Assembly (NCBI GenBank): GCA_963924565.1
Contig: OZ004615.1
Coordinates: 16,368,001-16,432,000 of the forward strand
Source of the DNA: Ascidiella aspersa
Lineage: Eukaryota
Length of the DNA: 64,000 nt
Reading direction: 5' to 3'
Shown here: positions 33,601-54,202 of the stretch, one piece after another
How positions within the stretch are numbered: the stretch's first letter is position 1
Layout of the letters: each line of letters starts with the position of its first letter
Notes under the pieces: model-generated
What the model was told of the DNA's origin: nothing
What the model saw: only the letters and a program-made list of their open reading frames with translations
Database searches by the model: none
Translations under genes and position numbers: made by a program

Positions 33601-36600
33601 AAGAGCTGCAGTTCCACTTGGAAATCGCAAACGACGACGACGGTGCGGATGATTGCAATGATGCGTCGTCGAAAATGCTGATCAAGTTGGATCCAACCGA
33701 CACTGAACCACCAGGAGAGGTAACATTGCCTGACGACGACGAGCTTGAAGTGAGTGCCTTAAGCTGCAACAGCCTTGGAATACCAATCAGACGCAAGAAG
33801 GGCCTGGGCGGGGAGGTCTCAGTGCGGGTTCGAACCCGCGACGGAACGGCCAAGGACGGGCTGCATTACACCGGCATCGACCAGCGAATCGTGCTCGACG
33901 ACCGCCAGGAGTTTTCGGAGGTTGTGGTGCCCCTGTTGTCGCTTCTATATCGCGACAGACTCAGTCTGGTTGTCGAGATTCTCGAGCCGGAAGGCGGCGT
34001 GACGTTGGGTGATGTGCAACACTCGTCGGTTACATTTCTACCGACCGATGACGAACCCACAGGTCAGTTGACGCTATGCGGCGATATGGACGGCGACGTC
34101 GTCGACGTGGACGCCACAACTACCAACATGGCCGTTGTGCCGGTTCGGCGCACTGGTGGAATGGGCGGGGGGGTATCCCTGCCTTATCGGACTAGGGACG
34201 GAACCGCCAAGAGCGGTACACATTACAAGGCAACCGATGGTGTTCTGACGTTAGGCGATCGCGAAACCGAAGGGAAGATATCGATTCCGCTTATCCCAGC
34301 CACGTACCGCGACCAACTTGAGTTCTACCTAGACACAGACGACGACAGCGGCGCCCAAGCTTGCGTATCCGTGCTTCTGCGGCCCACGGATAACAGTCCA
34401 AGGGGCGATCCCGCCTTCACGACAACAGACGGCGAGATAACTGTGGACCCCAAGAAAGTAGACCTCGTCGAAATACCCCTGAGCCGAGTTGGCGGTTTCG
34501 GCGGAGAACTCGACGTGACCGCGATTACTTGCGACGGCAGCGCCCTGGCCGACGTGCACTACAAGCCCCTGTACTCGGTCGTTACCTTTCCGGACGAAGA
34601 GACCGAATCTTCGATTTCTGTGCAACTGTTGGACGCCCAATACGACCAACCTTTGTGCTTCGAGGTGCACATAAACGGCGCCGACGAGCCTTCCGAGAAA
34701 CTGAAGAAGCTCAAAGTCAACCTGCTACCGACCGTGGTCGAGCCCCCGGGGCGTGTGATCGTCGATGCTTCATCGCCCGATGAAGGACTGAGGTTGGACA
34801 CCGAAGGACTTGACACGATATTTGTTCCGCTGACACGCGTAGAAGGGAGTGGCGGGGAAACACACGTCGATTACGAGACTAAGGATGGCAGCGCAAAGGC
34901 AGGTCAGCATTACGACCCCGTTCGGGGACGGGCAACGTTCGGTGACGGACAGGTCGAAACTGCAATCGACATCCCGCTCATATCTTGCTCGCGAACAGAG
35001 CCTCTTGATTTCACCATTGCTCTGCGCGGCGAAGACAACGATAACAATGACGGCGGTTATGAAGAGACGCGCGTCGTTCTGCTGCCCAACACTGAGCCCG
35101 AGAGCCACGACGTCGACGTTGACGCTACCTGCGTCGAAGCGTGCGTCTTGGACGACGGCGTCGCGCGCGTAACTGTGCGTCGCGGTGACGCAAAGTGCGC
35201 CAATGCCATCCCGATTTCGTACAAGACGAAGAACGGCAACGCCAAGGCAAGGAAGCATTATCAGGCGACGAGCGGGCGCGTCCAGATCCCATCGGGCGGC
35301 GATCAATGTTGCATCGAAATCCCGCTTAACAAACTCGACTACCGGCGCCCTGCCAACTTCTTTGTGCAGGTTAAGACGCAAACCAAAGTAGTGCGCGTTG
35401 TCGAGGTTGTTCTTCGTCCCACTGTGGAAGACCCGCCCGGCTTTCTCGAGTTCACGGCCCCTACTTTCGCGCACCCAGCTTTCACAAGCGACAGCGGCAA
35501 GCCGACCCTTTTGCTGCCGGTTGAGCGTACCGAGGGCACGGGCGGCGAGGTGTGCGTCGACTACTTCACACGCGACAACACAGCAATCAACGGGCAGCAT
35601 TACGAGGAAGCGAGCGGCGCGCTGACGTTCGGCGACGGCGAGTCACGCAAGGAGCTTGCCATCGAGCTGCTGCCATTCGACAACTACACGAAGGACGTGT
35701 CGTTCGTGGTCGAACTGGGGCTAGCGACCGGCGGCGCCGAGGTGGAAGGAAACTACGAGACGGAGGTGACTCTCCTGGCGCCGCTTGACGAAAACGACCC
35801 AGGTGTGCTTGGGTTCGAGTCGCAACGCACAGTTGTGTCCTCAACGCGGCTGCAGCGTGAATCAGACCGACCGGTTACAATCCAGATCCCAGTGAGGCGC
35901 ACACTCGGTTGTGGCGGCGACGTGAGTGTCGACTACTTCACGCGAGACAACACAGCCGTCGCCGGGCTCCATTACGCCGAGACTGAGGGCGAGCTTGCCT
36001 TTGCTGGTGGCGATGCCCGGCAACACATCGAGGTCGATTTGCTGCCAGGTGCGCACTTCGCCAAGCAGTGCTCTTTCACCGCGGAGCTGGGTGGTACGAC
36101 CGGAGACGCCGAAGTGGGACTCTACGAGACCGAGGTCGTACTGAACGCGCTTAAAAGGCGAGATTCGTCGAGCAGCTCCAGCAGTTCTTCGTCTTCCAGC
36201 TCCTCCGGTTCATCCGACAGTTCCTCGAACTCATCGGACGACGAGGGCGTTTTCAGGAAAAGTTCCCGATCAAAGCGGGTCCTTACCAAGACCAGCCAGA
36301 GGTCGGTGAAAGTGCTTCAGATGGAAGAGAGAACGACCACCACGACTTTTCAGACTATCGAGACCTTGGAAACCCAGTCGGCCTCGAGATCGGTCGTCGT
36401 ACAGCAACAAGAGCTCGACTTGGGTAAGATTAACAACATTGTCTGTTAAATGACCTTTATTTTGGTGGGGAACGAACGCTCGACAATGTACCTTTTCAAT
36501 TGCCTCTCTTCTTATTTGAATATGCCATTTAAGTTGCGGGACTTCACGTCAGCTTTTTTAAAATATTCCTTTTAAATCTAACTATCACAATCGGATGTAT

Positions 36601-39600
36601 AGAGAACGAAAAACCAGTAACCTATGTTGAAGTACGGCATTAAACAAAAATGATCCTCCTTAAAATATTACGCAGAACTGTAAAAATATATGGATAATTG
36701 TTTCAAAACGTTGCTACAATGCGCCCTACAACTGTAAAAGAGTTCAATATAAACTAATTTCTTCACGTTGTAAATCATGACTAACACAAACTTCGCAAGA
36801 CTATACAAGAAAATTGTGCATTCCTGAAATATTCAAATAACAAGGCCTTGTAATTGCCGATGAAATAAGTTATTTGAATTGCTAAATCATGGCTATCAGA
36901 AAATGGCAAGAAACAAATACCCAATCCCGACGTTTTTCGTGTGGGGCCTTTTAAATTGACCGGGGAATGAGGTATTTAAATTGCTGGGGTCGACTTTTAT
37001 AATAAAAGCGTTCGACTTTTATAATAAAAGCGTTCGCTTTTCCCGCAGGCGACGACACAGGAGGAGAAATCGGTTTCCCAGAGGAACAGCAGTCGGTTCG
37101 CGCCGGAGTGGACCGCGAGGCAGCCGTCACGGTCGCGCGCTCTTACGGGTTCAAGGGTCAGGTCACGGTCGACTGGTTTACGCGCGAAAACACGGCGGTC
37201 GAGGGCGTCGACTTCGTGCAGTGCGAGGGCCAGGTGACCTTCGCCCAAGGTCAAAAGATAGCCACTGTACACGTGCCGTTACTCGACGGAAGAGGAAATC
37301 GTGAGAGGGGCAGTTCATCCGAGAGGAGTTTTATCGTCGAAATGGGTGAACCAGATGGCGACGCCACCATGGGTCGGTATGAGACCAACGTGGTAGTGGT
37401 GGATCCTGATACGTCACAGTCCCCGCGGAAAGGTTTGCATATTTAAGCTTTTTGACAGGATACGTTGCACTGGTTACCAAGATTTAAAGTATATCGCCGA
37501 AACTTTGCCATTACGAATCGTTTTAGGTAGTGTTTGTGTTGCACAAGTGTGAATATAGTCCATAAATTAGAGTAACAATAAATACGCTGTAGCACAGGTC
37601 CTCTAAAACGATAAATACATTTTTTGTATACTTTTCTGTCTTTTATCCGCGGACACAACTGTGTCATAAAATACTATTTGGTGCTTGATTTATGTTTGGT
37701 ATTTGGTCTAAATTTACCACCTATAGGCTTTGGTGTCAGCGTTTATTTTATTCTTTCGTTAACATCGATTTTGTTTCGCAGGCAAACATCGAACCTTCGG
37801 CGGCAGAAAAACATGATTACCTGCTCGCCCTTTTTCACTAATTTTCAATATATATTTCTTACACTAACTCGAAATGTTCCTTAAATAGCTTACTAATCAA
37901 TATTCTTTTGTAGGATGTTTCTATATGAACTTTGTAATCTGTTCTCTACTTATATTTTCTTGCTTGCTTTACTAAGCATCTTTTCTTACAGCCTGTCCCC
38001 AGAAAGTCAACTTTATTTGAATACTTTGTCTAACTTTGAATGTAAAAAAAACTAACAGTTATATCGTCAGGGTAAACCTGGCTAAAAATCGGCATGTGAT
38101 GCCGTAACTCTAACTTGTTTGTCGTTTGTAACGCAAAGTTATTTAACATTCCGGGCTGCTTACAACAGACAAGTGACGTGACTTTACATATAACACTTGA
38201 CTGACGTGTATTGTTGCTCGCTCTTTCTGTTAACGACTCACACAAAATTCACGGCAAAAACACATTCTGAATCCCTGACTGGTGGTTGTCCCTGTTTCTC
38301 GATGGTGAGGTCTCTTCTACAATCTTGTTCCCGCTGTCGACTGGTATTTGTTGACTTATGTTTGTTTCAATTTATTATCGTCCGATAATATCTCGAAAAA
38401 TGGGTGTCTTGTATCTGTGTCTGGCATTGTCTTTTTACCGAGTCGGAAGCATTGTGGGTTAAATTTTCCAAGTTTTAAAGATCCATTGTTCTGGGTAAAA
38501 TGATACAAACGATTAAACATGTAAATATAAATTTAAACAGCTTTGAAGACATATCTTAGGACAATGTAGAAATCTTAAACACGTCTTTGACTATTTCAGC
38601 TCGCTTGGTGGCGCCCAAGAACGTGTCGGTTGACGTCACAGGAGCGACAAGCTTTAAGGTCAATTGGGAGCCGCAGGAAGCAACAGTTCACGAGTACTTG
38701 GTAGGTTAACGTTAGGGGTTTTGCAGTTACAAACGTTTTTTGCAGTAATAAAATCGAGTTCAAAATATGTTTTGCGTCATAACAGGACTACAACTAACGG
38801 TGTTTTTAAATTCATTGCTAATTCCGACAGCAAGTTACTGAGGATTCATATCTTAAAGCGTTTAGTGATTTTTAAACAGTTGGTGACATAGTTTGCTATT
38901 TAAATAGAAAACGTAATAACTCTTAATAAGAATATCAAAGCCCATACAGAAGTAGGTATCATTTTGAACGTTTCGAATAACTCTTATTATTGCAAAATTG
39001 TAATAAATTATCTTATTAAAATGTTTTAAATCGTGTTATACAAATAGGTCTGGTGCCAGTAAAAAGTACAAGCCGGCGTTCAAATGTTCATCAAACATGT
39101 CGCTGACAGTTCTTTCGCCCAAAATCGGAAACTATATAGAGCAGTCAGTTCAGTGAAATGGTACACACAACTAATAGGATGTATTCCGCATAAAAACGTT
39201 TCTATTTGCAAGCGTACATCAAATCCGTAACACTGTGTAGCCGATGACAAACTGAATGTGTAAAATATGAAGATATCTCCTCGCCCTTACACGTAAATGA
39301 CGACAATGGCTTCAAATGGGAGCAAATATTTTTTAGGCTTTCCCGTCAAAGTCAGTCATTAATAAGTTCTAGTCTTTTAAAGAATCATTCTATTTGAATA
39401 AGAGACTGATGATGCCTTATTTTGGGGCGAAATATATTTCTCTTTCAAAGGACTAGAACTTATTAATGACTGACTTTGACTAAGACCAAAGGAAAGTCTA
39501 AAAAAATTCACTGTGTAACCGCGTCGCTAATCGTTGCACAGGTTTCGTACAAACGAGCTGGAGACGCCGATGAACCTCACCGCTACACAGTGCCACCTAG

Positions 39601-42600
39601 CGATCACGAGTTCAAGGTCGACGGCCTTCTGCCCGAGTCGGCTTACGCGGTCGTGGTGTCAGCGCTGGGCGAAGGCGGCCAACAAGCGTCGAGCGATGTG
39701 ATCGGCTGCAAGACCCCTGGGAAAGGTAAATTACATAACTGTTTTCTACCAACCCGATGGTAGAAAAGCTGATCTTGCAATGCAGGATATTTGCAAGTTG
39801 TGAATACCAGACAATCCAGACATATTTTGTTTGTAATTCAAAATTTCTTAAAAGCGGCACAAGTTTTCTTAAGAACGCTTCTCTTAAAACCGTATTGTTT
39901 TATAAGCTTTTGAACACAAAAGTATATATTAACTATTTTATCGGCGAGTTCAACACATTTCATGAAACGATTATCTAATTTTTAAGCACATATGGCAGAG
40001 CCAAAGAAGTTGACATTCAGCAAGACCCTACAGTGTTAATTAAAACGATATATAAAGCGTCACTCTAGTTGCCCACGCTACGGTTTTTGTCGAAGAGTTT
40101 TTTTTTCGACAACGTTAGACCAAGATGCCAATTGTGTTTCAAACGCAGTTCCTGGACCTCCGAACAGACTTGCCTTCCAAGTACTATCCCCGACCTCGTT
40201 ACATTGCTCGTGGGGTGAACCTGCCGAAACGAACGGGCTTATCACCGGTTACGAAGTACTGTACAGGCCTTCTGGTAAGTGTACCTTTGGAAACATTTTT
40301 ATTATTGTAGGTGGTGTACAGGGAATTTCCTTTTTTGAGTATTGTTATATTACGTGCTTAGGAGATAATGAAACTCGGGATCTAGTAGACATAGCGGTGT
40401 AACCTACGTATTTCCAGGATCGCTCTACAAGCATATTGGAAGGCAGATTATTATTTTACAATAAGTTGTAATTCAGCTGAAGGCTCTGCACCTCTGTTAA
40501 ATATATATTGGTAAAAAAACTGAAGATGATATAAGCTCGTATTGAAATGTCTTAATAAAGATGATGTCGATCAACTCGACCTTATTGGGTTTGCAATTCA
40601 TTATCAAGCTACATTACAGATTCGTACAAAGTGTACCCAAATATTTGTTGGTGTAAAAAATTAATGTAAGGGTTCACCAAAAAACTGAAAAAAACAAATA
40701 ATGTTGTAGATCAAATAAAATAGTTCATTGAAACAACACAAGCTTCTTCACACATTTTCAGTCGGCATACTTCAACTAAATATGTCCTGTTTCGATTGCA
40801 ATAAAATTGCACGAAGCCTTGAGCCACCCTTGACAAACAAAACAACAAAAATACATGTAATCTTCCCAGACGACGACCCCAACAAAGACGAGCCGCCGAT
40901 CATGGTTCGCATCCCAGACGGACACTACCGCTCCTTGCTGGTGGAGGAGCTTCTTCCGGACACCTCGTACGTGTACAGCGTGCGCGCCCAGAACAGGGCC
41001 GGCACCGGGCCGCCCAGGGACGCCACCATGAAGATCGAGAGGGTCGGATCCCGGCCTCCTTCAGGTAATTATGCCGAACCGAGTTTTTGTGGTGTTTGTT
41101 TTATCAGTGCGTTAGCTTTAGTCATCAGTTTTTTTATGTTGGCATATAGGTTTTAATTTTCAAAGGTAAAGATGCAATGAAGTTTGTTTATAGTTATTGT
41201 GTTTTTGGTAAGCGCTGGTCAATTGTCGTTATTTGCCTGGATAAAGCGCTACCTTGATTATCACACTCTCAAAAACGTCGCAAATATAAAAAAAAATCAT
41301 TATGATCAGAATACGCCTCAAATGACTTCATCTAAATTAATAGGTTTAGAGCTTATGGTGAAACTAAATCTTACCTCATGCCTATTTGAGATTTTAAATT
41401 TTAAATGTAGCTTTGTATATGTAAACAATTAATTGAAGATTGTTAACTCACCCTAAACGACAAGCTTTTTGCGCAGCCATCTTTCTGGACGAGGAAAACA
41501 TGAAGGCAGTTCAGGAGCAAATCCGCTTGGAAGAAGCGGTGAGGCTTGCCAACCGAAGCATCAGCAGCAGCAGCGACGGACAGTCGCACGACGGGGGAAC
41601 CAAGGTATATCGAAATCTCTTGCAATGTCATTGTATCACAGGTTGCAGCTGAAATTCAAAACGCGTTGAAAGTGTAAAACAGTTGAAAGCTAAGTATCGA
41701 TAAGTTTTAGAATGGCTGAGAAAACAAACTTAAACCGCAGTGAACCACAGGTTATTTTACGTTCCTATTAAAAACTTGGAAGTTGTAGTATGTTTGACCT
41801 AATTTGTTTGGTGCACACCCGTATAAGTAGCTGCCGTATGTGTGTGTGTGGCAGGATACACTTCTTATATACTCGTCAATATACGCTAGTTAGTCTAGTT
41901 CAGCACTGTTTATAAATGAACTTGATATGCGGCTCACATTGTAAACACATTTCGGCTATGTGATTCTATATTTAGAAAAAAAATTTGCCGACAAAGTTTG
42001 TCAAAATAATTCGTCTAAAAGTTCAAGACGATTTTCAACACTTTAACGCTGTTGAGATCGAAACTTCAAAACAATATCTACAGTTTCTCATAAGGTTTTT
42101 TAATATTTTTGTATGGCAGATAACGACGACAGTTCGTCATGTCGTGCCACAACCGCAAAGTTCAAGCTCTGCGAGCAGCGCGACAAAGACAAGGGTTACG
42201 AGGTAGCTTTGTAATTTTGTGTGTTTATGCCAATTTTCAGGGTCTTGTATAGCTTGTTTTTATGGTTCGATTAGCTAGAAAAAATATATTTCATTTATTT
42301 ATTGAAGTGTTTTTGTTAAAGTCTAAAATAAAATCGGGTATCGCCACCATTTGATTTGTTCCGCAAAAATACAGCCAACAATCTAAACATTTTTGACAAC
42401 CTAAAAGTATAGTACTCCAAGTTCACCAAAAGCACTGGTATAAGTTTTAAAACTTTGCTGAAAGATTTTACGTCGTGCTTAATTTTTGTCGCCCAAAACC
42501 GCCCGAAAATCCATTAACTATTTCCTACATATAAACGCTGGCGTGTGTTACTGCGTTTCGCAGATACATTCACAAAACGGGACAACGGGAGCCGGAGGTT

Positions 42601-44790
42601 GAAACGGCGGAATATGACGGGAGATTGTCGCAAGAAGAACTGGCCAAGCTGGCAGAGGGGAGCCAACGAATCGAGGTAAGACAAAATGCGTCATCTTGCA
42701 TGCTAAATTACTCCCAAACGGCCCGGATCATTTCTAAAACAGGACTGACTACGCAAGATTGCAACTTTAGACTGGCGAAAACATTGCCACAAGTAAACTT
42801 TTCTCACTTCTTTTGACCTCGCTTTCTTTATGCATAACCAGTACCAAGGTACACTGTAAATCATTACCTATATTATATAAAGTATGAAAGTATGTGTTCA
42901 TAAATGACATATTCTAAAAACATACTATCTTGGGTCTATTAGATCGGGCCCAAAATATTTTCCATGCATTCCTATAATTTGCTTTTCGGTCTAATTTAAC
43001 TTTCCTAGCACTTTATTGACATTTCCCTTGTATCGATAAAATGCAAGCGTCTATACTTTCACTGTCGCATGTCTGCCTTTATTCTCGCTCCTTTTCACAT
43101 TTTCAACGCTTCACGCACTTCTTTTATTTCACAGTGCGCTTCGCCTCTTCAGGTAATATGCAACTCTATCTGGCTTGTTGATTCCTTGCTTTTTCTAATG
43201 ACGCATGTTTGATATTACAATGCTTTGCCATTTGCTCACATTTATATTTTCAACCTGGGATGATTGCATGGATTTATTACCGACTTACAACGTTCTATTT
43301 AAATGTCTGAAAAACAAAACATTGTTAATTTCTAAAAAGTGGAATAAAAAAAATATAAATAAAATAAATACCAGTATCGCAAACAAAAAATAAAAAAGCA
43401 AATGTTAATTTATTTTCCTGTTTGCGTGGTAAAGTGGTTTGATATTCGAATACAAATATAGATACCCTTAAAAGCTGTAAAAGTAAAAAAATAACATAGG
43501 AAGATAACACAATATTAACTTCAGGTTAAGCGAGCCAAAAATGTTTTTGTGTAAGTCATATATTAAAAGTAACTCGCGTGAATGTTTCATAATTATTACC
43601 ACGACAAATTTCCACTTTTCTCTGGTTAGTTGCTAAAAACCTGCGTGGTATTCGATAACTAAATCCTGTGGGAATTAATCAAACGGCTTACATATTTAAC
43701 AATGACACGACAAAATACTCCTGGCTATAAACTCATCTGGGGAAACTTTGTGACGTTTGCAATAGAAATACAGGATCAAGGTTGTGTGAGATTTAGCGCC
43801 GCGTAAACCCGGAAATTGCGGTTGTTAACTGAGGTCACTGGCGAGTGGAAAATCCAAGGCGAGCCGGTGTTTTGTTTGCCGCGGTCAGTTATAATTGCAG
43901 AGTAGAGAACTTCGACAATGGCCGGGTTTCGAACAACATATTGGCAGCTGCGCACAATAGTTTGATCTTGACTAAAACTGAGAGCATGTTGAATTGTTGA
44001 TATGTTTTGTTATAAGGATGAGGTGTACAAAATGTGCCTTTGTCGTTTTTGTGACATTTTAATGCAGTAAATAACCCATGATTGCTGAAAAAAACACAAG
44101 TATTTCTGTTTTGCGTAAATTTATTGACTGTCTCTTTGAGGTAATTCGGTAAATGATTTTGTTGCGTTTGTATATACTTTAGATTTTAGAACGATAAGGC
44201 CCGCATGATGAAATATCTTGTGCGACAAACATACAAAATGCCAACAGGGCATACTGCGTTTTACACTTATCTTCAATTAACATAGTAGGATGTAAAAAGT
44301 TATCGACGAGCAATATGAGTCAGTATGATTTGATTGCATGCAACACATCGCATGGCACTCGAACAGGTGCGAAATGTTGACGCTCGTGCAGCTTCCGATG
44401 TTCGTCCTATATACACAAAACTACCGCATAATAGAAACACACCTACATATTCCGCCTCAAGTATTTTCCCGATTTTCGTAGGTCATAACTAATTTATTAT
44501 TTTGCGTTTAGGTGCAAGTGATCTCGTACAACACTTCCAGTAGCGGCTCGAGCATTCCGAGCGGTTACCAGCAGCAGACGCAAATAACCAGCACCGACGG
44601 GGGTTCCCCTGTGATGACGCAACAGCAGCAACAACAGTATCAGCAGCAAGAGGGGCAACCGGGCGGCAACTTCACGTCGTCTTACTCCGCCTACCCCCAG
44701 GAATACGTCAACACTGACGTCAGGAGTGACGTTTCACAGGACACGGCGGTCTATACCGACGTGCAGGAAGAAAAGGACGGGGATGTGGAT
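528..44790 (+). CDS. Giant multi-exon gene (partial at both ends): ~41 Calx-beta repeats + 4 FN3 domains; C-terminal module resembles the integrin beta-4 cytoplasmic tail
   Basis: 48 exons joined by hand at AG/GT sites (one GC donor). All intron phases match and the reading frame stays open for ~5,590 codons. Repeated Calx-beta motif (G.i.F....; V.V.R..G..G.V.V.W/Y.T.DGTA..G.HY....G.L.F..GE..K.I.I.L) and FN3 motifs (W..P...GY.V; L.P.T.Y...V...N..G.G). Confidence 0.92.
1095..1262 (+). CDS. Exon, Calx-beta C-half ([18 protein letters not shown]...)
   Basis: ctag acceptor, gtaggg donor, open frame. Confidence 0.88.
1960..2124 (+). CDS. Exon, Calx-beta N-half (...[14 protein letters not shown])
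   Basis: tttccacag acceptor, gtggga donor. Confidence 0.88.
2445..2806. mobile_element. Non-autonomous hAT-type MITE with internal (GTAATT)n arrays
   Basis: TIR CAGAGTTGGATCAATT...AATTGATCCAACTCTG; perfect 8-bp TSD GTTCTACC (2437-2444 and 2807-2814). Confidence 0.85.
2843..3013 (+). CDS. Exon, Calx-beta C-half ([18 protein letters not shown]...)
   Basis: tttctccag acceptor, gtgagt donor. Confidence 0.88.
3558..3596 (+). CDS. Candidate 39-nt cassette mini-exon ([13 protein letters not shown])
   Basis: tacacag acceptor, cag|gtatta donor, phase 1-1, no stop; GCATG cluster downstream. Confidence 0.55.
4110..4320 (+). repeat. Intronic tandem duplication (~120-bp unit, 2 copies)
   Basis: GATAAAGTAATCAATA...AATTGTACATTCAGTTATTTTCGCCTAATTA occurs twice. 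Confidence 0.75.
4471..4749 (+). CDS. Exon, degenerate Calx-beta N-half with Ser-rich insert
   Basis: tttttccag acceptor, gtaagt donor; ORF 4473-4778. Confidence 0.88.
5206..5370 (+). CDS. Exon, Calx-beta C-half ([15 protein letters not shown]...)
   Basis: cacag acceptor, gtgaga donor. Confidence 0.88.
6007..6147 (+). CDS. Exon, Calx-beta N-half ([14 protein letters not shown]...)
   Basis: ctcag acceptor, gtaaga donor. Confidence 0.88.
6691..6891 (+). CDS. Exon, Calx-beta C-half; ends at a GC donor
   Basis: gtgtag acceptor; AG|GCGAGT donor gives the phase needed by the next exon. Confidence 0.82.
7038..7309. mobile_element. hAT/Charlie-like MITE
   Basis: Ends CAGTGTTTCTCAACC...GGTTGAAAAACACTG; no TSD detectable. 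Confidence 0.65.
7521..7724 (+). CDS. Exon, Calx-beta ([11 protein letters not shown]...)
   Basis: ttcaacag acceptor, gtttgt donor. Confidence 0.88.
8002..8139 (+). CDS. Exon, Calx-beta C-part
   Basis: gcgcag acceptor, gtaagt donor. Confidence 0.87.
8596..8714 (+). CDS. Exon, Calx-beta N-part ([13 protein letters not shown]...)
   Basis: tttcag acceptor, gtaagt donor, phase 1-0. Confidence 0.87.
9090..9223 (+). CDS. Exon, Calx-beta middle ([15 protein letters not shown])
   Basis: AAG acceptor, gtagtt donor, phase 0-2. Confidence 0.8.
9483..9691 (+). CDS. Exon spanning a Calx-beta repeat junction
   Basis: ttttttcag acceptor, gtttgt donor, phase 2-1. Confidence 0.87.
9815..10080. mobile_element. 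hAT/Charlie-like MITE
   Basis: CAGGGTTTCTTAACC...GGTTAAGAATCACTG; 8-bp TSD TTTTAGAT on both sides. Confidence 0.8.
10242..10451 (+). CDS. Exon, Calx-beta C-half ([19 protein letters not shown]...)
   Basis: ccgcag acceptor, gtattt donor. Confidence 0.88.
11028..11224 (+). CDS. Exon, Calx-beta N-half
   Basis: caccag acceptor, gtgagt donor, phase 1-0. Confidence 0.87.
11571..11732. repeat. Foldback repeat family B (other copies ~8245-8330, ~20304-20434, ~40518-40612)
   Basis: Shared GATAATGAATTGCAAA...TCGAGTAGATCGACATCATCTTGATTA motif; palindromic at 11571 and 20304. Confidence 0.75.
11892..12057 (+). CDS. Exon, Calx-beta C-half ([16 protein letters not shown])
   Basis: ctacag acceptor, gtaagt donor. 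Confidence 0.88.
12523..12721 (+). CDS. Exon, Calx-beta (...[10 protein letters not shown]...)
   Basis: tttttttag acceptor, gtttgc donor, phase 1-2. Confidence 0.88.
13260..13396 (+). CDS. Exon, Calx-beta C-part
   Basis: atttcag acceptor, gtaaaa donor. Confidence 0.87.
14048..14104 (+). CDS. 57-nt linker mini-exon ([19 protein letters not shown]), candidate cassette
   Basis: cctgcag acceptor, gtaagt donor, phase 1-1. Confidence 0.7.
15210..15361 (+). CDS. Exon, Calx-beta N-half
   Basis: ccacag acceptor, gtaagt donor. Confidence 0.87.
15714..15814 (+). CDS. Exon, Calx-beta middle ([16 protein letters not shown])
   Basis: ttcgcag acceptor, gtaaga donor. Confidence 0.86.
16146..16321 (+). 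CDS. Exon spanning a Calx-beta repeat junction
   Basis: ttgcag acceptor, gtagga donor. Confidence 0.87.
16800..17236. mobile_element. hAT/Charlie-like MITE (degenerate)
   Basis: CAGTGTTTCGCAACC left end, repeated GCGGCACCC subterminal motifs, right end GGTGAGAACCACAG; partial TSD TTCTA. Confidence 0.55.
17276..17515 (+). CDS. Exon, Calx-beta C-part
   Basis: tcgcag acceptor, gtaagt donor. Confidence 0.88.
18031..18192 (+). CDS. Exon, Calx-beta N-half
   Basis: ttctcag acceptor, gtaata donor. Confidence 0.87.
18261..18431. repeat. Foldback repeat family A (other copies ~12866-13010 and half copy ~38927-38986)
   Basis: TAAGAATATCAAAGC.CATACAGAAGTAGG.ATCATTT arms in inverted orientation; found three times in the window. 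Confidence 0.75.
18733..18906 (+). CDS. Exon, Calx-beta C-half
   Basis: ccccag acceptor, gtacgt donor. Confidence 0.87.
19549..19716 (+). CDS. Exon, Calx-beta N-half
   Basis: AAG acceptor after a pyrimidine tract, gtaaaa donor. Confidence 0.82.
20083..20250 (+). CDS. Exon, Calx-beta C-half ([20 protein letters not shown])
   Basis: gtgcag acceptor, gtaagt donor. Confidence 0.88.
20674..20834 (+). CDS. Exon, FN3 domain A, N-half
   Basis: PPNVVSDF...SW.....[10 protein letters not shown]; cacag acceptor, gtaaaa donor. Confidence 0.88.
21243..21363 (+). CDS. Exon, FN3 domain A, C-half
   Basis: [26 protein letters not shown] (FN3 tyrosine-corner motif). Confidence 0.9.
21807..21993 (+). CDS. 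Exon, degenerate Calx-beta N-half + Ser-rich insert
   Basis: ggcag acceptor, gtgagt donor, phase 1-2. Confidence 0.85.
22663..22946 (+). CDS. Exon, Ser-rich insert + degenerate Calx-beta C-half
   Basis: cgtag acceptor, gtgaga donor, phase 2-1. Confidence 0.85.
23419..23544 (+). CDS. Exon, FN3 domain B, N-half
   Basis: PGRVRKP...[17 protein letters not shown]. Confidence 0.88.
23986..24141 (+). CDS. Exon, FN3 domain B, C-half
   Basis: [22 protein letters not shown]. Confidence 0.88.
24553..24882. mobile_element. hAT-like MITE
   Basis: 8-bp TSD CCCTATAG (24545-24552 and 24883-24890); right end GTTTAAAACCCCTG. Confidence 0.7.
24966..25144 (+). CDS. Exon, Calx-beta N-half + Ser/Asp insert
   Basis: ccgcag acceptor, gtaagt donor, phase 1-0. 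Confidence 0.87.
25154..25601. mobile_element. Nested PIF/Harbinger-like MITEs
   Basis: GGCCCGTTTACACTACAGCTG at 25154 and 25267, inverted copy ending ~25501; outer arms 25177-25246 vs 25533-25601; TAA upstream of 25154. Confidence 0.7.
25729..25924 (+). CDS. Exon, Calx-beta C-half
   Basis: ccgcag acceptor, gtatga donor. Confidence 0.85.
26219..26575 (+). CDS. Exon encoding one complete Calx-beta domain
   Basis: ttttcag acceptor, gtgagg donor, 357 nt, phase 1-1. Confidence 0.87.
27613..36423 (+). CDS. Giant 8,811-nt exon: 24 tandem Calx-beta repeats + poly-Ser and Thr/Gln-rich tail
   Basis: Coding part of ORF 27426-36449; ttttattttcag acceptor, gtaaga donor; ~115-aa repeats with T.DGTA..G.HY and F.DGET.K.I.I.L. 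Confidence 0.93.
28272..31621 (+). repeat. Near-identical internal duplication within the giant exon (28272-29449 vs 30441-31621)
   Basis: Long DNA-level identity with an offset of 2169-2172 nt. Confidence 0.9.
37049..37432 (+). CDS. Exon encoding the last Calx-beta domain (integrin beta-4-like position)
   Basis: cccgcag acceptor, gtttgc donor; [26 protein letters not shown]. Confidence 0.9.
38600..38700 (+). CDS. Exon, FN3 domain C, N-half (like beta-4 FnIII-1)
   Basis: [23 protein letters not shown]; tttcag acceptor, gtaggt donor. Confidence 0.88.
39345..39480. repeat. Inverted repeat with ~33-bp arms (MITE-like)
   Basis: GTCAAAGTCAGTCATTAATAAGTTCTAGTC...GACTAGAACTTATTAATGACTGACTTTGAC. 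Confidence 0.75.
39542..39725 (+). CDS. Exon, FN3 domain C, C-half
   Basis: [21 protein letters not shown]...VIGCKT. Confidence 0.88.
40149..40274 (+). CDS. Exon, FN3 domain D, N-half (like beta-4 FnIII-2)
   Basis: [39 protein letters not shown]. Confidence 0.9.
40870..41064 (+). CDS. Exon, FN3 domain D, C-half
   Basis: [33 protein letters not shown]...RPPS. Confidence 0.9.
41477..41604 (+). CDS. Exon, linker after the FN3 pair (connecting-segment-like)
   Basis: gcgcag acceptor, gtatat donor, phase 1-0. Confidence 0.8.
42120..42202 (+). CDS. Exon, Thr/Ser-rich linker
   Basis: ggcag acceptor, gtagct donor, phase 0-2. Confidence 0.75.
42564..42675 (+). CDS. Exon, linker
   Basis: ttcgcag acceptor, gtaaga donor, phase 2-0. 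Confidence 0.8.
43135..43152 (+). CDS. Candidate 18-nt microexon (CASPLQ)
   Basis: Long pyrimidine tract + cacag acceptor, cag|gtaata donor; phase 0-0 matches both neighbours. Confidence 0.6.
44512..44790 (+). CDS. Last exon found in window: Ser/Gln/Tyr-rich low-complexity segment
   Basis: cgtttag acceptor, strong gtaagt donor; ORF 44512-44817. Confidence 0.82.
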
Positions 44791-47700
44791 GTAAGTTCAA
44801 AAGTGTTTTTTCTGTAATAGTAGTTTCAGTTGAATACAAGGGGTGACTTAATTAAAAGTCAAATTCGTGAACTCCGTCATAACATATTCCTCAAAGGATT
44901 GATAAGAAAAATGTGAAGTTTATGTAACTGTTTTACATATTTTTTCAACGATAGTAAACAACATCCCTCAAACTAAACATTTTAACATGTTTGACTGGAC
45001 AATTTATTGTCAAACAAACCTATAGAAATAGGAGTTCAACTTAGCCATATAGACAGGAGGTGGCCTAGTACGGTTACTGTGTGCTCGGCAGCGCAAGTAA
45101 ATTCGATTTCCCACAATTAAAAGCGTCCAAGATCCACGCGATTCATCATTCCAAAACGCGGCTCCCTTCTAGCTCATCGTGAAAACGCACAGCGGCGGCC
45201 CCACGCGCTATAAAGAGCAGTCCTTACACGTCTCTGTATTAGTGATGTCACCGCACCGAAAAACATTGTTTGCGGTTCGCGCAAAAGTTATGCCCGCTAT
45301 TTTAGGCAGCGTCAGCGAGCGATTTCAACACATAGCTCCACACCTTCCCTTTGGTGAAACCGCAACTAGCGCTTTGAAGAATCGGGCCTCCCAAAGATTC
45401 GGGCCTTTTAATACCGATCTGTGCCACTGGTGATTATTAGGATCCTTTTAAAAAAACGGTACCGGCGATTATCGGGCATTGCTGGAGTGGCGTTCTTGCG
45501 CAAATATTCGTTTTCGGTTGTATTGGAACTGAAAATGGCCAAATATGGGGTCGTCCAATCGCGAGAAAAATCACTTGCAGATCAAACTGAGCGGGGCAGG
45601 TGCATAATTAATGTTGTTGTGATTGGCCTCTAAGCACCGTTGACATAATTCGTTTCTCTATGGTTGCATATCGTATGACAGGGGTGTAATGTCCGTCTTA
45701 ACGAACGATATGAGTTCAAATAGCGAAATATCCAACTAAACAACTAATATTAAATTCTGTTTAAACGTATTTATGATAAAAGATAATTATTTCCCCGACG
45801 CTTTTCCAAACAAAGCTATGAACAATTTCCAAATTGATTACCTATTTTAATTTGCCATCGAATCGTATCGTGTATTGTTTTTATTTTAACCCGGTATTAC
45901 TGTTTCGATATTTAAAGGGTAATGAAATTAATTAATAGTGACACAGGTTATGAGCAATTCCTCCCTTCCATTTTCCATACTATCGTAGTCTTTGAATTTG
46001 AACTCAAGACGTGTCAATTTATAAATAGTTATGGATAGCCCGAGTAACAGCAAATTAATTAGCGCTGACCCGCCCCAATTTCGTGACGCTTTCGCTACAC
46101 CCCGCAAAGCCCGCCCAGGCACTGCGGCTACCTACCGCGATGACTTTTGCATAGCAACGCTATCGCTGGTCGACATATTTATTCTGTGGCCACCAGCTAT
46201 ATCCGCCTTTCCACGACAGAAGGATCGGCATACGTAGGAAGTCACAATTAAGTGCCGCAATCGAAATGATTTGGTGTGCTGTGTGCTTAATGATAGGGAA
46301 GGTGAAAGTCCGATTCCTGTCCAGCACCTTCGATTTGCTTATTGCGAGTTTGCGTTGTGACGATGCACTTTTGCGAGGCATTTCAATGCAAACCGCTTAT
46401 TCTGGCGAGCCCAAGTGGTTGTGTCAGAATTAGGCTTTGATCGAAGGACTGATTTTTTTTCTCGCGAGTATTCGCGTTGCACTTTTTCTGCTTTTAAGCC
46501 ACTGGCCGCCTTAAACGAACATCAATTATACGCATTTTGGAATCTTAAGTGTCGGTTGACAAAGTTGTTTAATTGCCAAACGAGGCAACGGCCGTAGATT
46601 ACTGGATTTGCATTTCCTGGTCTTAAACTAATATGCCGAATATGTGGGCTGCTTGATTGGGAAAAGTTTTAAAGGATTTAAAAGTGATAAACAACATCCG
46701 ATAAAAATATCCGCTTATTTAAAGTAACAATGCTATTTCTTTTTAGTTTTGTTTTGTTCGGCAAGAGACTATGTTTAAAGCATGTTACATCACTAATCCA
46801 ATCCTAAATTTTCGATTGCGTTATTCTTGTGACGTTGCAGTGTACCCCAATGTCAAATTTTGTCAGTCGTTAATTTTGTTGGAGCTTATGTCAAATTTCG
46901 TCAGTCGTTTATTTTAATTAGAACATTTAACTGTTAATTTGTCTTTTTCAAAATGAAAAAACGCAAAACTTGTGTGGTCAAAACTTGCCGGGGGTCTTCA
47001 CTAATGTGATGCAATGCCTCGTTTTAAAAAAAAGTATTTCGTTCTTTGAAAAGAAAATTTTGTTTATAAAGGAAAAATTTAACAAAGCGTTAATACCAAC
47101 GGGAACATCTTTCAAAGCATCTGTTATCTTCGCTTGGTAATTGCGTAATTCGCCGCAATGATGTTGAAATGGCTGGTGTTTGTAAAAAGATGTTGACAAA
47201 GCCGAATTGAATGTCAAAGTTTCATAACAGCTCGTCCGGGTTCGGCTCGACATTTGTCCCAATTTTAGAATCTTTTGTTTGGCGAGTTTTTGTCGTAATG
47301 TCTTACCTAAAGTCCAAAGGTCGTTCTTGAAGGTTGTACGTTTGCACGCACACGGGTATTACACGATAACAAAATTTTAGGTAAACCTGTAACGTTCCAG
47401 TTATCATAAAATTGATTTACTTCTAATCAAACAAGAATATTCCTGATATTGTTGGAACAGGCGCTCAGACGATTCACTTTTGATTGATCAAACGTTTAAT
47501 AACAGGTTACGACAATCACCAAGACTTACCGAACGACCACGACGGAACGAAGGTTGGAGACCACCTCGGGAATGAAAACGGTACTGCTCACCGAAGACGG
47601 GCAGCAGATTGAAAATCAAAGGCACCAGCAGCAGTAACTGCTTGCGATTGGCACGGCTACAAAGGCCGCCAAACCACGCTGGACACAACAACCTGGCCGC

Positions 47701-52231: not shown

Positions 52232-52789
52232 CTAAAAAGATAACCGCATTTGTAAGAGCGTCGGGCCAATACCAAGGAACTTTTCGCGTTCGTCATTCGT
52301 GTGGCTTTATTGGGTTTGCGAAATTAAAACAATAAAACAAAGCCTTCCCTGTTTGCACCCAAAACCGTTATGCAGCTGGTGAAGGTTCAGTTTATTATGT
52401 GTTTAAAACGTTATGTTTAAACATGAGGCCTTTTATGTGAAGGCAGCATGAGTTATAGTCTGCGCGACCAAACCCCAGCCAGCTATTATTTTGAAACAAA
52501 GTTTTGGGTATATACACTAACCCTGGCCTTTTCTGTTAGTAAGTGTAACAAGCGGCTAAATTTTAAGCTAACTATTGTATTTACACGCAACACAACCTCT
52601 TGTATATCGTTTTCACCAAAGAAAAGGTAACTTAGTTTTGCATAAAGAAGCCCTGCTGGAAATGTTTGTAATGGTAACAACCCGGGGGATGCTACGAGAT
52701 CGCTTATCGCCTAGAGAAGCTTTACGCACCAATTCGGTCGCTTTGCATGAAATCGAGTTAAAACAAAGAAACCGCAACGGACCACCAAC

Positions 52790-54202
52790 CTTATGACAGC
52801 GGACGCAGTGTGACATCGTTTGCTTCGCAACACTAGCAGGAATCAGAGTGGAGAGCGCTCGAATGCATTTCGGGTCTTTCGATTCAAGTTTATCCTTCAG
52901 CATGCGTTTGAGGTCCTTGGCACTGCAGCCGTCCAGAAACTGGTCGAGGCGGACGGCGTCGTTGGTCAGAGACTCGACCTTGGGCGTTGGGCTGACGGAT
53001 GAGTTTGTTTCGGCTGTGGAGAGCGACTCGGTTTCGCTGCGATCATTGACGCTGAGCGAGCTGAGATCTCCAATGACCCGCGAGCTTTTGGTTGACCGAG
53101 ATGGTTTCGGAAAAAACTGAGGCTCTTCGACCCTCAGGGGACTTGGCTTTACGTAATGGGTGTGAAAGCCCGCGTGCTCGCCCAGAAAGAGTTCATCCGC
53201 CAAAGGATCGACAGGAGGAATATCAAACTGGTCTGCGCCGGTGACGTAGTCGGATACAGCCGGGCCCTTTACGGGTGTGAAGATGTTGGAGCTGCTGATG
53301 TCGGAAAGGTCGCTACCGCTTGTCAGGCGCTGCTTTCGGGGAATCACCGGGGTGAATGCCGACTTACGGGATCCATCGCTCGAGACCAGAGGCGATGGGG
53401 TCTTATGCTCGGATGGGTAAACTGCCGGAACCCGGATGGGGCTGACCTGGGAGCTGTGTGAGTGAAACTTGGTCGGGCTTCCGAAGGTGAAGCTCGCCGA
53501 GTCTTCAAGCGGCGTGTCAGGGGTCATCTGGATGCGGGGAACTTGAAGAGTCCTGGGCTTCTTCAGGATGCCTCTCTTGGCGGAGGCGGACGACTCCGTT
53601 TCGCTCACATCCGCGTCCGACTGGGAGGTCTTCCGCCACTTGGCATTCTCGTAGTCGGACTTATTAATGTTGCTGGAGAGGTGCAGCGGGTCGTAGTAGG
53701 ACTGACGCCCGTAACTGTCACCGACATAGTAGTAAGAGTTGGAAGACTCTTCGCCGTACTTCAACACGGGAGAAGTAGGAGACGGCGTCATGGACACAGT
53801 CGAAGGCGCGAAGGTCTCGGTGTAGCCTTGCGTCTGCTGGGCGTAGCCCCTCTGCTGGTGAATCGCCTCGTCATAGCTCGAAACACTCGAGGACGCGCCC
53901 TTCCTTTGCTTGAACTGCTGTCGCTTGTTGGCGGCATCCGGCGTGCTTGCGTAAATCTGGAACGCCTTGTCCGATGTCATACTCTTGAGCGGCGAGTTGG
54001 CGCCGTCGTCGCTGGACGCAGTGGTCGAGTAGCCGCTTTCGCACACGTCGTTGTTGAAGGTGACCTTGCGTTGCTCGAGTGACGTCTGGCTGCTGTGCCA
54101 GCGGGGCTGCTTTCCGTTCTGCGAGGATTGCTGGCTGATCAGGTGGTTAATCATTACTTGACGGTCTCGCAAATTGCCGTGCATCACTATACTGATATTG
54201 GC
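52790..54202 (-). CDS. Antisense gene, large exon: Ser/Pro-rich disordered region + start of Cys/His domain (HCVRCHK); first ATG at 54184
   Basis: ORF 52613-54187; - strand acceptor tttttttcaacag at 54203, donor aag|gttggt at 52789; GC-rich coding-like composition. Confidence 0.85.

What the first reader, a model, noticed from the sequence alone, without database searches (positions are those of the whole stretch)
40149..41064. Both plectin-binding arginines of beta-4 FnIII-2 appear conserved
Established: human beta-4 R1225 and R1281 in FnIII-2 contact the plectin actin-binding domain and are mutated in epidermolysis bullosa. In my manual alignment to the recalled human sequence, R1225 (PGRLAF) matches PNRLAF (codon 40166-40168) and R1281 (PKNRMLLIENL) matches [11 protein letters not shown] (codon 40929-40931). 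RPxS after the domain is also kept, but the following prolines of the beta-4 connecting segment are not. Inference: the protein may bind a plakin/spectraplakin ABD and link to intermediate filaments.
Basis: partly seen in the sequence, partly recalled or inferred. Interest (0 to 1): 0.8.

Follow-up and report, generated by a model that had tools for sequence, protein, structure and literature searches.

The report
Sea-squirt integrin beta-4 keeps plectin contacts
The last fibronectin-type domain in the giant inner tail of a sea-squirt-type integrin beta-4 keeps the three charged residues that human beta-4 uses to grip plectin, which hints that this link to the cell skeleton is older than vertebrates, although binding itself has not been tested.

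Summary
Observation confirmed. Two transcript-supported exons (40149-40274, 40870-41064, + strand) encode one FnIII domain. Formal alignments put its Arg codons 40166-40168 and 40929-40931 in the columns of beta-4 R1225 and R1281. The third salt-bridge residue, E1242, is also kept (40217-40219).

The domain is specifically FnIII-2-like: 53.0 + 44.7 bits against 27.2 + 30.6 for FnIII-3, and 51-53% identical to lamprey and fish beta-4. It ends the cytoplasmic tail of a real integrin beta gene. The head, EGF repeats and membrane helix lie 13-25 kb upstream of the window, and the head matches vertebrate beta-4 best.

Styela clava LOC120348632 is the orthologue. The trio is invariant in every relative found: 6 of 6 for the first Arg and the Glu, 5 of 5 for the second Arg.

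The same genome encodes a plectin/MACF1-type actin-binding domain that keeps the three partner residues, with plectin repeats downstream.

Against the binding idea:
- the 27 connecting-segment residues needed for strong binding are not conserved;
- FnIII-3,4 are absent;
- binding is untested, and the joined domain was never folded or docked.

Ciona's beta-4 orthologue is published (2005), but its long tail was left undetermined. The scan noted this module on this window only (s1-801582), not on other DNA.

The parts
37006..37443 (+). stop-free stretch holding the last Calx-beta exon before the FnIII pair
   Evidence: Pfam Calx-beta 44.5 bits. PDB best hit is NCX1 at 34.5 bits; the integrin beta-4 Calx-beta (3fq4_A) scores 28.1 bits. 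Exon ends were not fixed.
38600..38700 (+). first half of the penultimate FnIII (counterpart of beta-4 FnIII-1)
   Evidence: AG at 38598-9 and GT at 38701-2. fn3 19.1 bits on the stretch. An X3 loose end before 39541 carries its last letters. FnIII-1 profile 11.3 bits against FnIII-3 10.8 bits, which is inconclusive for this half alone.
39542..39725 (+). second half of the penultimate FnIII
   Evidence: AG at 39540-1. Joint 39725|40149 in 2 X4 RNA reads and an X3 contig. No beta-4 FnIII-1 hit in PDB. The whole-domain orthologues favour FnIII-1: 36.1 and 34.6 bits against 15.3 and 16.6 bits for FnIII-3.
40149..40274 (+). FnIII-2 first half (strands A to C). Arg 40166-40168 faces R1225 and Glu 40217-40219 faces E1242.
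   Evidence: FnIII-2 profile 53.0 bits against 27.2, 23.7 and 4.7 bits for FnIII-3, -4 and -1. The two variants seen in runs X2 and X3 (40174 C>G, 40192 G>A) are synonymous by my reading of the frame.
40519..40645 (.). interspersed ~125-nt repeat inside the intron; not part of the protein
   Evidence: 58 further matches at 75-90% identity in G000. Depth spike in the reads.
40870..41064 (+). FnIII-2 second half (strands C' to G) plus RPPS. Arg 40929-40931 faces R1281; RPPS is at 41052-41063.
   Evidence: FnIII-2 profile 44.7 bits against 30.6, 17.6 and 2.1 bits. Joints 40274|40870 and 41064|41477 stand in X3 contigs.
41477..41604 (+). tail exon 1, starting with the hydrophobic IFLDEE stretch after RPPS
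   Evidence: Joints; exon-wise translation; no Pfam family; no similarity to vertebrate beta-4.
42120..42202 (+). tail exon 2
42564..42675 (+). tail exon 3, with a motif shared with Styela (…GQ.EPEV…DGRLSQ.EL…)
44512..44790 (+). tail exon 4 (Q/S/T-rich)
47506..47637 (+). last coding exon (TTITKTY… motif), stop at 47635-47637
   Evidence: The X3 loose end at 44792 matches it.

Best explanation
The finding lies in the 3' part of a very large integrin beta gene on the + strand.

Shown:
- The gene has an ordinary integrin beta ectodomain and one membrane helix upstream of the window. A cytoplasmic tail follows, made of dozens of Calx-beta repeats with two interspersed FnIII domains. It ends in Calx-beta, FnIII, FnIII and a 244-residue tail.
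- The head is closer to vertebrate beta-4 than to any other beta subunit compared. The last two FnIII domains correspond to beta-4 FnIII-1 and FnIII-2.
- The gene is therefore the tunicate-type orthologue of ITGB4. Compared with the vertebrate protein, its Calx-beta part is hugely expanded and FnIII-3,4 are missing.
- FnIII-2 keeps the three residues (R1225, E1242, R1281 in the human protein) that form the salt bridges to the CH1 domain of plectin. They are invariant in all relatives found.
- The genome also encodes a plakin with a plectin/MACF1-type actin-binding domain that keeps the three partner residues.

Inferred:
- FnIII-2 docks by charge onto CH1 of that plakin, as in vertebrate hemidesmosomes. 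This would tie the integrin to a cytolinker, and through its plectin repeats perhaps to intermediate filaments.
- The docking would compete with actin for the same domain.
For: Gene and topology:
- Integrin_beta matches at C9:16343116-16345455, 23-25 kb upstream on the same strand; the best scores 115.6 bits.
- Reading of L001-L003 shows MIDAS-type, EGF and beta-tail exons, a membrane helix, then Calx-beta exons running into the window.
- The giant exon holds 16 Calx-beta stretches.

Orthology:
- The head exon scores 172.6 bits on Styela clava LOC120348632, 116.2 on lamprey beta-4 and 97.8 on fish beta-4. It scores at most 84.0 on any human beta chain in the PDB.
- The lamprey beta-4 head segment scores 122.7 bits on this gene and at most 86.4 (two exons summed) on the 4 other integrin beta loci of the genome.
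- Ewan 2005 placed a Ciona beta chain as the beta-4 orthologue (PMC1145181, passages).

Domain identity:
- Exons A and B score 53.0 and 44.7 bits on the FnIII-2 profile, against 27.2 and 30.6 for FnIII-3.
- Identity to vertebrate FnIII-2 is 51-53%, with a C-C' loop of equal length.
- A Foldseek search with a model of relative P0252 ranks the beta-4 FnIII-1,2 chains first (3f7q_A E 3.8e-14, 30-32% identity).

Residues. Conservation is 6 of 6 relatives for the first Arg and the Glu, and 5 of 5 for the second Arg.

Partner:
- ABD exons lie at C4:3674608-3680575. Their best PDB hits are plectin and MACF1. E, R and D at 4q58_A indices 31, 34 and 86 are identical here; these correspond to P1a E68, R71 and D123 by their spacing of 3 and 55.
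- Plectin repeats lie at C4:3724270-3742782 on the same strand.

Expression and splicing.
Against: - No binding data exist.
- Strong binding in the human protein needs 27 residues of the connecting segment; beta-4 1115-1328 binds weakly (PMC2174221). The tail exons here show no similarity to the vertebrate connecting segment or C-tail.
- The penultimate FnIII is only weakly FnIII-1-like. The window halves score 11.3 and 11.3 bits against 10.8 and 9.2 for FnIII-3, and there is no beta-4 FnIII-1 hit in the PDB.
- The last Calx-beta matches NCX1 better than the beta-4 Calx-beta.
- Arg and Glu at the first two columns also occur in beta-4 FnIII-3, which does not bind the ABD. Another FnIII of this gene also has Arg at the third column.
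- With 30 of 92 columns invariant, three conserved columns are only modestly unexpected (0.032).
- The partner residues are shared with MACF1, so they do not single out this interaction.
- The AF2 model of P0252 has mean pLDDT 60. Its domain pair superposes on beta-4 at 10.8-12.9 A rmsd.
- Continuity of head and tail in one transcript is not shown for this genome. It rests on same-strand exons and on the Styela gene model.
Confidence: 0.55

Rival explanations
1. The domain is a true FnIII-2 homologue, but the three charged residues are kept for another reason and no plakin ABD is bound. The reason could be another partner, an intramolecular contact with the conserved tail or the Calx-beta array, or surface charge needed for solubility.
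For: - The connecting-segment stretch needed for strong plectin binding is not conserved.
- The tail instead carries its own motifs, conserved with Styela and three unnamed fragments.
- FnIII-3,4 and the vertebrate C-tail, which add further plectin and BP230/BP180 contacts, are absent.
- Two of the three residues are also found in the non-binding FnIII-3.
Against: - R1281W abolishes plectin binding without disturbing other beta-4 interactions (PMC2174221), so in the human protein this residue is a dedicated contact.
- All three contacts are invariant in 8 sequences spanning vertebrates and the tunicate type.
- The partner residues are present in the genome's plakin.
Confidence: 0.33
2. Chance: an ordinary FnIII domain that happens to carry Arg, Glu and Arg at these columns.
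For: Each residue alone is not rare in FnIII domains: 9.8%, 10.9% and 15.7% of 459.
Against: - All three occur together in 2 of 459 domains.
- The domain is 51-53% identical to beta-4 FnIII-2 and sits in a beta-4-type integrin.
Confidence: 0.03
3. The Calx-beta/FnIII exons belong to a separate, possibly extracellular, giant Calx-beta protein (FRAS/FREM or ADGRV1-like) that merely lies downstream of an integrin gene.
For: - No transcript spanning head and tail was examined here.
- Calx-beta arrays occur in extracellular proteins, and ADGRV1 hits appear.
Against: - The Styela clava gene models P0154 and P0158 carry the integrin head, Calx-beta array and the same last FnIII in one protein.
- Calx-beta exons start about 0.7 kb after the membrane-helix exon on the same strand and continue into the window.
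- The FnIII pair is beta-4-specific.
Confidence: 0.05

Closest known systems
Vertebrate integrin beta-4 (ITGB4), FnIII-1,2 / plectin ABD complex (PDB 3F7P, 4Q58)
   Same: - Integrin beta head with best similarity to beta-4, one membrane helix and a long cytoplasmic tail.
- Calx-beta followed by a tandem FnIII pair.
- FnIII-2 is 51-53% identical, with the same C-C' loop length.
- The R1225, E1242 and R1281 equivalents are kept, and RPxS follows the domain.
   Different: - Dozens of Calx-beta repeats instead of one, and two extra interspersed FnIII domains.
- No recognisable connecting segment, no FnIII-3,4 and no vertebrate C-tail.
- A 244-residue tail with motifs of its own.
- FnIII-1 is much more diverged than FnIII-2.
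Ciona Ci_beta5, the published ascidian orthologue of beta-4 (Ewan et al. 2005, PMC1145181)
   Same: An ascidian-type integrin beta grouped with vertebrate beta-4. Calx-beta-like open frames lie 3' of the gene.
   Different: That paper could not determine whether the long tail exists ('data not shown' for the Calx-like ORFs). It says nothing of FnIII domains or plectin contacts in the passages I read. I did not compare the Ciona sequence itself.
Styela clava LOC120348632 (P0154, 4606 aa; annotated 'uncharacterized protein')
   Same: Same architecture. The head exon scores 172.6 bits, the last FnIII is 68% identical with the same three residues, and the tail motifs are the same.
   Different: It is a different species. 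The Calx-beta array aligns at only 23% identity in the best local alignment, so its length and repeat number probably differ.
Nematode fibrous organelles (VAB-10A plakin with LET-805/myotactin); recalled, not tested here
   Same: An invertebrate hemidesmosome-like link in which a plakin ties a membrane receptor that has FnIII domains to intermediate filaments.
   Different: The receptor is not an integrin and is not related to beta-4. This is a functional analogy only.

Membership tests
Integrin beta-4 (ITGB4) orthologue group | Integrin beta ectodomain (PSI, beta-I with MIDAS, I-EGF repeats, beta-tail) and a single membrane helix | tested here: met
   PF00362 matches at C9:16343116-16345455. 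Reading of L001/L002 shows a DxSxS-type exon, EGF and beta-tail exons and a hydrophobic helix. The helix was read by eye, with no predictor.
Integrin beta-4 (ITGB4) orthologue group | Head closer to beta-4 than to other beta subunits | tested here: met
   116.2 and 97.8 bits on lamprey and fish beta-4, against at most 84.0 on human beta-1, -2, -3, -6, -7 and -8 chains. Reciprocal check: 122.7 bits against at most 86.4 on the 4 paralogous loci. These are bit-score comparisons of one exon; no tree was made.
Integrin beta-4 (ITGB4) orthologue group | Cytoplasmic Calx-beta followed by the FnIII-1,2 pair | tested here: met
   Calx-beta 44.5 bits. FnIII-2 assignment is clear. The FnIII-1 assignment is clear only for the whole-domain orthologues. 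Foldseek's top hits are beta-4 FnIII-1,2.
Integrin beta-4 (ITGB4) orthologue group | Connecting segment, FnIII-3,4 and C-tail as in vertebrate beta-4 | tested here: not met
   No FnIII after 41064. The tail stretches match no Pfam family and have no similarity to lamprey, fish or sturgeon beta-4. I therefore file it as a variant orthologue, not as a protein with beta-4 architecture.
Integrin beta-4 (ITGB4) orthologue group | Pairs with a laminin-binding alpha-6-type subunit | not tested
   No alpha subunit was examined.
Plectin-ABD-binding module of beta-4 | FnIII-2 with R1225, E1242 and R1281 on the A, B and E strands | tested here: met
   the residue roles come from the PMC4353693 Fig. 6 legend. 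Their exposure on the surface is inferred from ungapped homology, not from a model of this protein.
Plectin-ABD-binding module of beta-4 | FnIII-1 present N-terminal of FnIII-2 (essential though not itself binding) | tested here: met
   The penultimate FnIII adjoins directly, with a linker of the same length as in beta-4. The requirement comes from PMC2174221.
Plectin-ABD-binding module of beta-4 | About 27 residues of the connecting segment that raise affinity | tested here: not met
   No sequence similarity. Only RPxS and a following short hydrophobic stretch look alike.
Plectin-ABD-binding module of beta-4 | Physical binding to a plakin ABD, lost on changing either Arg | not testable with these tools
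   This needs protein work or complex modelling of the joined domain, which I left out.
Plakin (plectin/MACF1-type) partner in the same genome | CH1 with the E, R and D that pair with beta-4 | tested here: met
   L015 exons against 4q58_A, 4z6g_A and 3f7p_A. The residues are identical at chain indices 31, 34 and 86.

The most novel reading that the evidence does not exclude
The charge-based dock between integrin beta-4 FnIII-2 and a plakin actin-binding domain was already in place in the common ancestor of tunicates and vertebrates. Tunicates would then build a hemidesmosome-like anchorage with it. In that anchorage the contact module sits at the far end of a tail of dozens of Calx-beta domains, a long and possibly calcium-sensitive spacer or spring between membrane and cytolinker. 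The conserved C-terminal motifs would stand in for the vertebrate connecting segment and FnIII-3,4.
Probability: 0.35. Interest if true: 0.75.

Novelty: new variant of a known kind. Interest (0 to 1): 0.55.

Why it matters
Hemidesmosomes and the alpha6beta4-plectin link are usually treated as a vertebrate matter. A Ciona orthologue of beta-4 has been in print since 2005, but its tail was left undetermined.

This work shows that the tail exists in tunicate-type genomes and ends in the FnIII-1,2 module. It also shows that the three salt-bridge residues mutated or mapped in human skin-blistering disease are invariant there, next to a plakin that keeps the partner residues.

That makes the age of this integrin-to-cytolinker link directly testable with a few recombinant fragments.

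The tail architecture is also unlike any described integrin: dozens of Calx-beta repeats between the membrane and the contact module. It raises the question of what such a spacer does.

Tried and rejected
- The representative search with exon A was swamped by multi-FnIII proteins ranked on summed score. Only 4 of the 150 listed proteins were relevant. Orthologues scoring under about 70 bits in total could not appear, so it says nothing about absence elsewhere.
- The Pfam CH search of the genome listed 14 matches. As I read them they include filamin-like and spectrin-like exons but no plakin. The plakin was then found with a short degenerate pattern, so one search was simply not sensitive to short exons.
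- The search with the Styela C-terminal region among long proteins gave 31 proteins, of which only the two Styela isoforms are orthologues.
- PDB searches of the penultimate FnIII half and of the last Calx-beta gave no beta-4-specific best hit.
- No beta-4 ectodomain chain appeared among the 60 listed, so the head comparison had to use lamprey and fish proteins.
- The tail exons found nothing in vertebrate beta-4.
- The de Pereda 2009 paper on the complex is not held. The full list of interface residues (PISA; Figs S7-S8 and Table S4 of PMC4353693) is in supplements that I could not see. Contacts other than the three salt bridges were therefore not checked.
- Paper searches for a described tunicate beta-4 tail or plectin contact gave only Ewan 2005. 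That holds for the held library only.
- I rejected the reading 'extracellular Calx-beta giant' for the reasons given under the rival explanations.
- The species name is coded. 'Ascidian type' rests on the Styela orthologue and on an unchecked note of the scan (s1-788248).
Full report
**What is at the coordinates.** The finding spans two exons on the + strand, 40149-40274 and 40870-41064, each flanked by AG and GT. Read in frame they give [41 protein letters not shown] and [64 protein letters not shown].

**Transcript evidence.**
- Run X3 has no recorded kind. Its contigs are deep on exons (depth 47-93) and shallow in introns (0-10), so it behaves like RNA.
- X3 holds a 351-nt contig that joins 40273/4 to 40869/70.
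- X3 also holds contigs with the joints 39725|40149, 41064|41477, 41604|42120, 42202|42564 and 42675|44512. All have GT..AG ends.
- Two raw reads of the RNA run X4 show 39725|40149. X4 gave only 17 reads from about 6% of the run, so expression there is low or the tissue is unsuited.
- The two variants listed inside exon A (40174, 40192) fall on third codon positions and are synonymous by my reading.

**The alignment.**
- Exon A matches integrin beta-4 FnIII-2 in PDB chain 1qg3_A (index 95-132, 38.3 bits, no gap). The window Arg lies opposite the Arg of PSEPGRLAF, and the Glu of SWGEP opposite the Glu of SWAEP.
- Taking index 100 as R1225, index 117 is E1242. That fits the residue names in the Fig. 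6 legend of PMC4353693, which lists three salt bridges: plectin-1a D123 with R1225, R71 with E1242, and E68 with R1281.
- Exon B matches 1qg3_A 145-190 with residues 9-54, and 3f7p_C 149-202 with residues 10-63. Both are equal-length stretches, which puts its Arg-20 at index 156, that is 1281.
- That alignment was not printed for me. I therefore built a profile of FnIII-2 from three beta-4 proteins returned by the representative search: P0109 (Lampetra planeri CAN0008225.1), P0112 (Brachyhypopomus gauderio integrin beta-4) and P0030 (an Acipenser fragment). The names come and the domain content.
- I aligned each exon to the profile on its own. Exon A scores 52.4 bits and exon B 44.2 bits. Both Arg and the Glu face the profile's Arg, Glu and Arg, and the C-C' loop has the same length.

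**Is it more than chance?** Among 459 other FnIII domains of 106 proteins, Arg stands at the first column in 45, Glu at the second in 50 and Arg at the third in 72. Both Arg occur in 7 and all three residues in 2. This sample was chosen by likeness to exon A and is therefore biased.

Beta-4 FnIII-3 has the first Arg in all three species, the Glu in two of three (Lys in lamprey), and Asn or Val at the third column. One other FnIII of this same gene (near 24009) also has Arg at the third column.

Given homology, the fair test is different. Of 92 columns comparable in three vertebrate beta-4, four relatives and the window, 30 are invariant and the three contact columns are all among them. That has a random chance of 0.032. 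This is supportive, not overwhelming.

**Which beta-4 domain is it?** I built four profiles (FnIII-1 to -4) from the same three vertebrates.
- Exon A scores 53.0, 27.2, 23.7 and 4.7 bits for FnIII-2, -3, -4 and -1.
- Exon B scores 44.7, 30.6, 17.6 and 2.1 bits in the same order.
- The penultimate FnIII (38600-38700 and 39542-39725) is much less clear in halves: 11.3 and 11.3 bits for FnIII-1 against 10.8 and 9.2 for FnIII-3. It finds no beta-4 FnIII-1 in the PDB.
- The whole penultimate domains of Styela P0154 and of P0252 do favour FnIII-1: 36.1 and 34.6 bits against 15.3 and 16.6 for FnIII-3.

**What gene it belongs to.**
- The window is G000:C9:16368001-16432000. The best Integrin_beta match of the whole genome lies 23-25 kb upstream on the same strand.
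- Reading those 30 kb (L001-L003) shows beta-I exons, EGF and beta-tail exons and one hydrophobic helix followed by a short basic stretch. From about 0.7 kb further on, Calx-beta exons continue into the window.
- Inside the window the open frame 27345-36446 alone holds 16 Calx-beta stretches.
- The FnIII pair is thus cytoplasmic, as in beta-4.
- The beta-I exon scores 116.2 and 97.8 bits on lamprey and fish beta-4, but at most 84.0 on the human beta-1, -2, -3, -6, -7 and -8 chains of the PDB.
- In the reverse direction, the lamprey segment scores 122.7 bits on this gene and at most 86.4 (two exons summed) on the four other integrin beta loci.
- This agrees with Ewan et al. 2005, who placed Ciona Ci_beta5 as the orthologue of beta-4. 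They could not determine whether it has the long tail, noting only Calx-like open frames downstream as data not shown (PMC1145181, passages).

**Relatives.**
- A search with the giant exon found Styela clava LOC120348632 (P0154, 4606 aa, and P0158, 4177 aa; annotated 'uncharacterized protein'). It has an integrin head, at least 13 Calx-beta stretches and FnIII domains.
- Its last FnIII scores 79.6 bits on the FnIII-2 profile, keeps Arg, Glu and Arg, and is 68% identical to the window's. Its head exon scores 172.6 bits.
- A search with the typed C-terminal part of P0154 found three unnamed fragments, P0252, P0253 and P0254 (JGI and Logan). They score 92.5, 93.7 and 87.4 bits and carry the same three residues.
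- P0130, a 107-residue Logan fragment 85% identical to exon A, keeps the first two residues and ends before the third.
- Count: first Arg and Glu in 6 of 6 sequences (window, P0130, P0154, P0252-4), second Arg in 5 of 5. P0158 and P0256 are the same gene or cluster as P0154 and P0252, and I did not count them.

**What follows the domain.** The tail is 244 residues in five exons ending at 47637. It has no Pfam family and no similarity to vertebrate beta-4, and there is no FnIII-3,4.

It shares motifs with Styela and with the three fragments. These begin with RPPS, one residue, and a hydrophobic [IL]FLD stretch. This matters because Geerts et al. 1999 mapped the plectin site to FnIII-1,2 plus 27 residues of the connecting segment. 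They found beta-4 1115-1328 only weakly active, FnIII-1 essential though not binding by itself, R1281W inactive, and binding stronger in low salt (PMC2174221, passages).

**The partner.**
- A Pfam CH search missed it. A short degenerate pattern hit once exactly, at C4:3675361-3675386.
- The surrounding 10 kb hold four CH1 exons. Their best PDB matches are plectin and MACF1 (37.8 and 37.6 bits, then 54.2 and 52.8 bits).
- In 4q58_A, the plectin-1a chain of the complex, the Glu and Arg of YEDLRDG are at index 31 and 34, and the first Asp of RNDDI is at index 86. That is a spacing of 3 and 55, as for E68, R71 and D123. All three are identical in this genome, which reads YEDLRDG and RSDDI.
- Plectin repeats lie 44-62 kb downstream on the same strand, and at four other loci. 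Whether they belong to the same gene is not shown.
- MACF1 has the same three residues, so this is permissive evidence only.

**Structure.** I did not fold the window's domain, because that needs the joined exons. The step of joining was left out throughout, and each exon was searched on its own.
- As a proxy I folded the natural fragment P0252 with four relatives as its alignment. Mean pLDDT was 60, with blocks of 61 to 88 over the two FnIII domains and a disordered tail except for residues 256-315.
- Foldseek against the PDB ranks beta-4 FnIII-1,2 first: 3f7q_A at E 3.8e-14, then 3f7p, 1qg3 and 4q58 chains, at 30-32% identity. Other tandem FnIII pairs follow at 13-25% identity (beta-4's own FnIII-3,4 pair reaches 24-25%).
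- The rmsd is 10.8-12.9 A, so the predicted angle between the domains differs or is unreliable.

**Reading.**
- I hold with high confidence (about 0.9) that this is the FnIII-2 of a tunicate-type beta-4 orthologue with all three plectin salt-bridge residues conserved.
- I hold with moderate confidence (about 0.5) that it docks on the plakin ABD, because the auxiliary connecting segment is missing and nothing has been measured. The link to intermediate filaments is one step further.

**Literature seen.**
- PMC4452579, PMC4353693, PMC2174221, PMC1145181, PMC2805694 and PMC4388270 were read as found passages only.
- de Pereda 2009 was not held.
- All other papers were seen only as search listings.
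- The mention of nematode fibrous organelles is recalled.

Noticed in passing
window 40519-40645: A ~125-nt interspersed repeat sits in the intron between the two exons. It has 58 other matches (75-90% identity) on contigs C1-C9, several as close inverted pairs, and a huge depth spike in all runs. It looks like a MITE-type element.
   Followed up: partly
window ~39400-39486: A second high-copy element lies just upstream of the FnIII-1 second exon. Contig depth is 3717-5597 and many loose ends occur at 39440-39486.
   Followed up: no
window 41477-47637: The tail after FnIII-2 carries motifs conserved with Styela clava and three unnamed fragments: RPPS-x-[IL]FLD, a TKTRVTRY…EPEV…DGRLSQ.EL block, and a C-terminal TDVQE…DVTTITKTY.TTTTER block. 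AF2 of P0252 predicts a hairpin-helix-strand unit at 256-315 (pLDDT 63-78). Function unknown.
   Followed up: partly
A last coding exon with the stop at 47635-47637 is joined in an X3 contig.
   Followed up: yes
window 40421-40482 and 42780-42820: Intron length variants (60 nt and 39 nt absent) occur in contigs of runs X1-X3.
   Followed up: no
G000:C4:3674608-3680575 and C4:3724270-3742782: A plakin-type actin-binding domain has plectin repeats 44-62 kb downstream on the same strand. Further plectin-repeat loci lie on C1 (7745168-7768392), C6 (two loci) and C4 (30078808-30079308).
   Followed up: partly
window 28717-28953 and 30889-31125: Near-identical off-frame open stretches about 2.2 kb apart inside the giant exon point to a recent internal tandem duplication of Calx-beta units.
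   Followed up: no
window 52616-54217 (- strand): A 534-codon open frame on the opposite strand lies downstream of the integrin gene. It is already the subject of another note (s1-802335).
   Followed up: no
L003:5349-5982 (C9:16363349-16363982): A long tandem array of a 24-nt unit lies in an intron upstream of the window. It reads as PKSSIHPP repeats in one frame.
   Followed up: no
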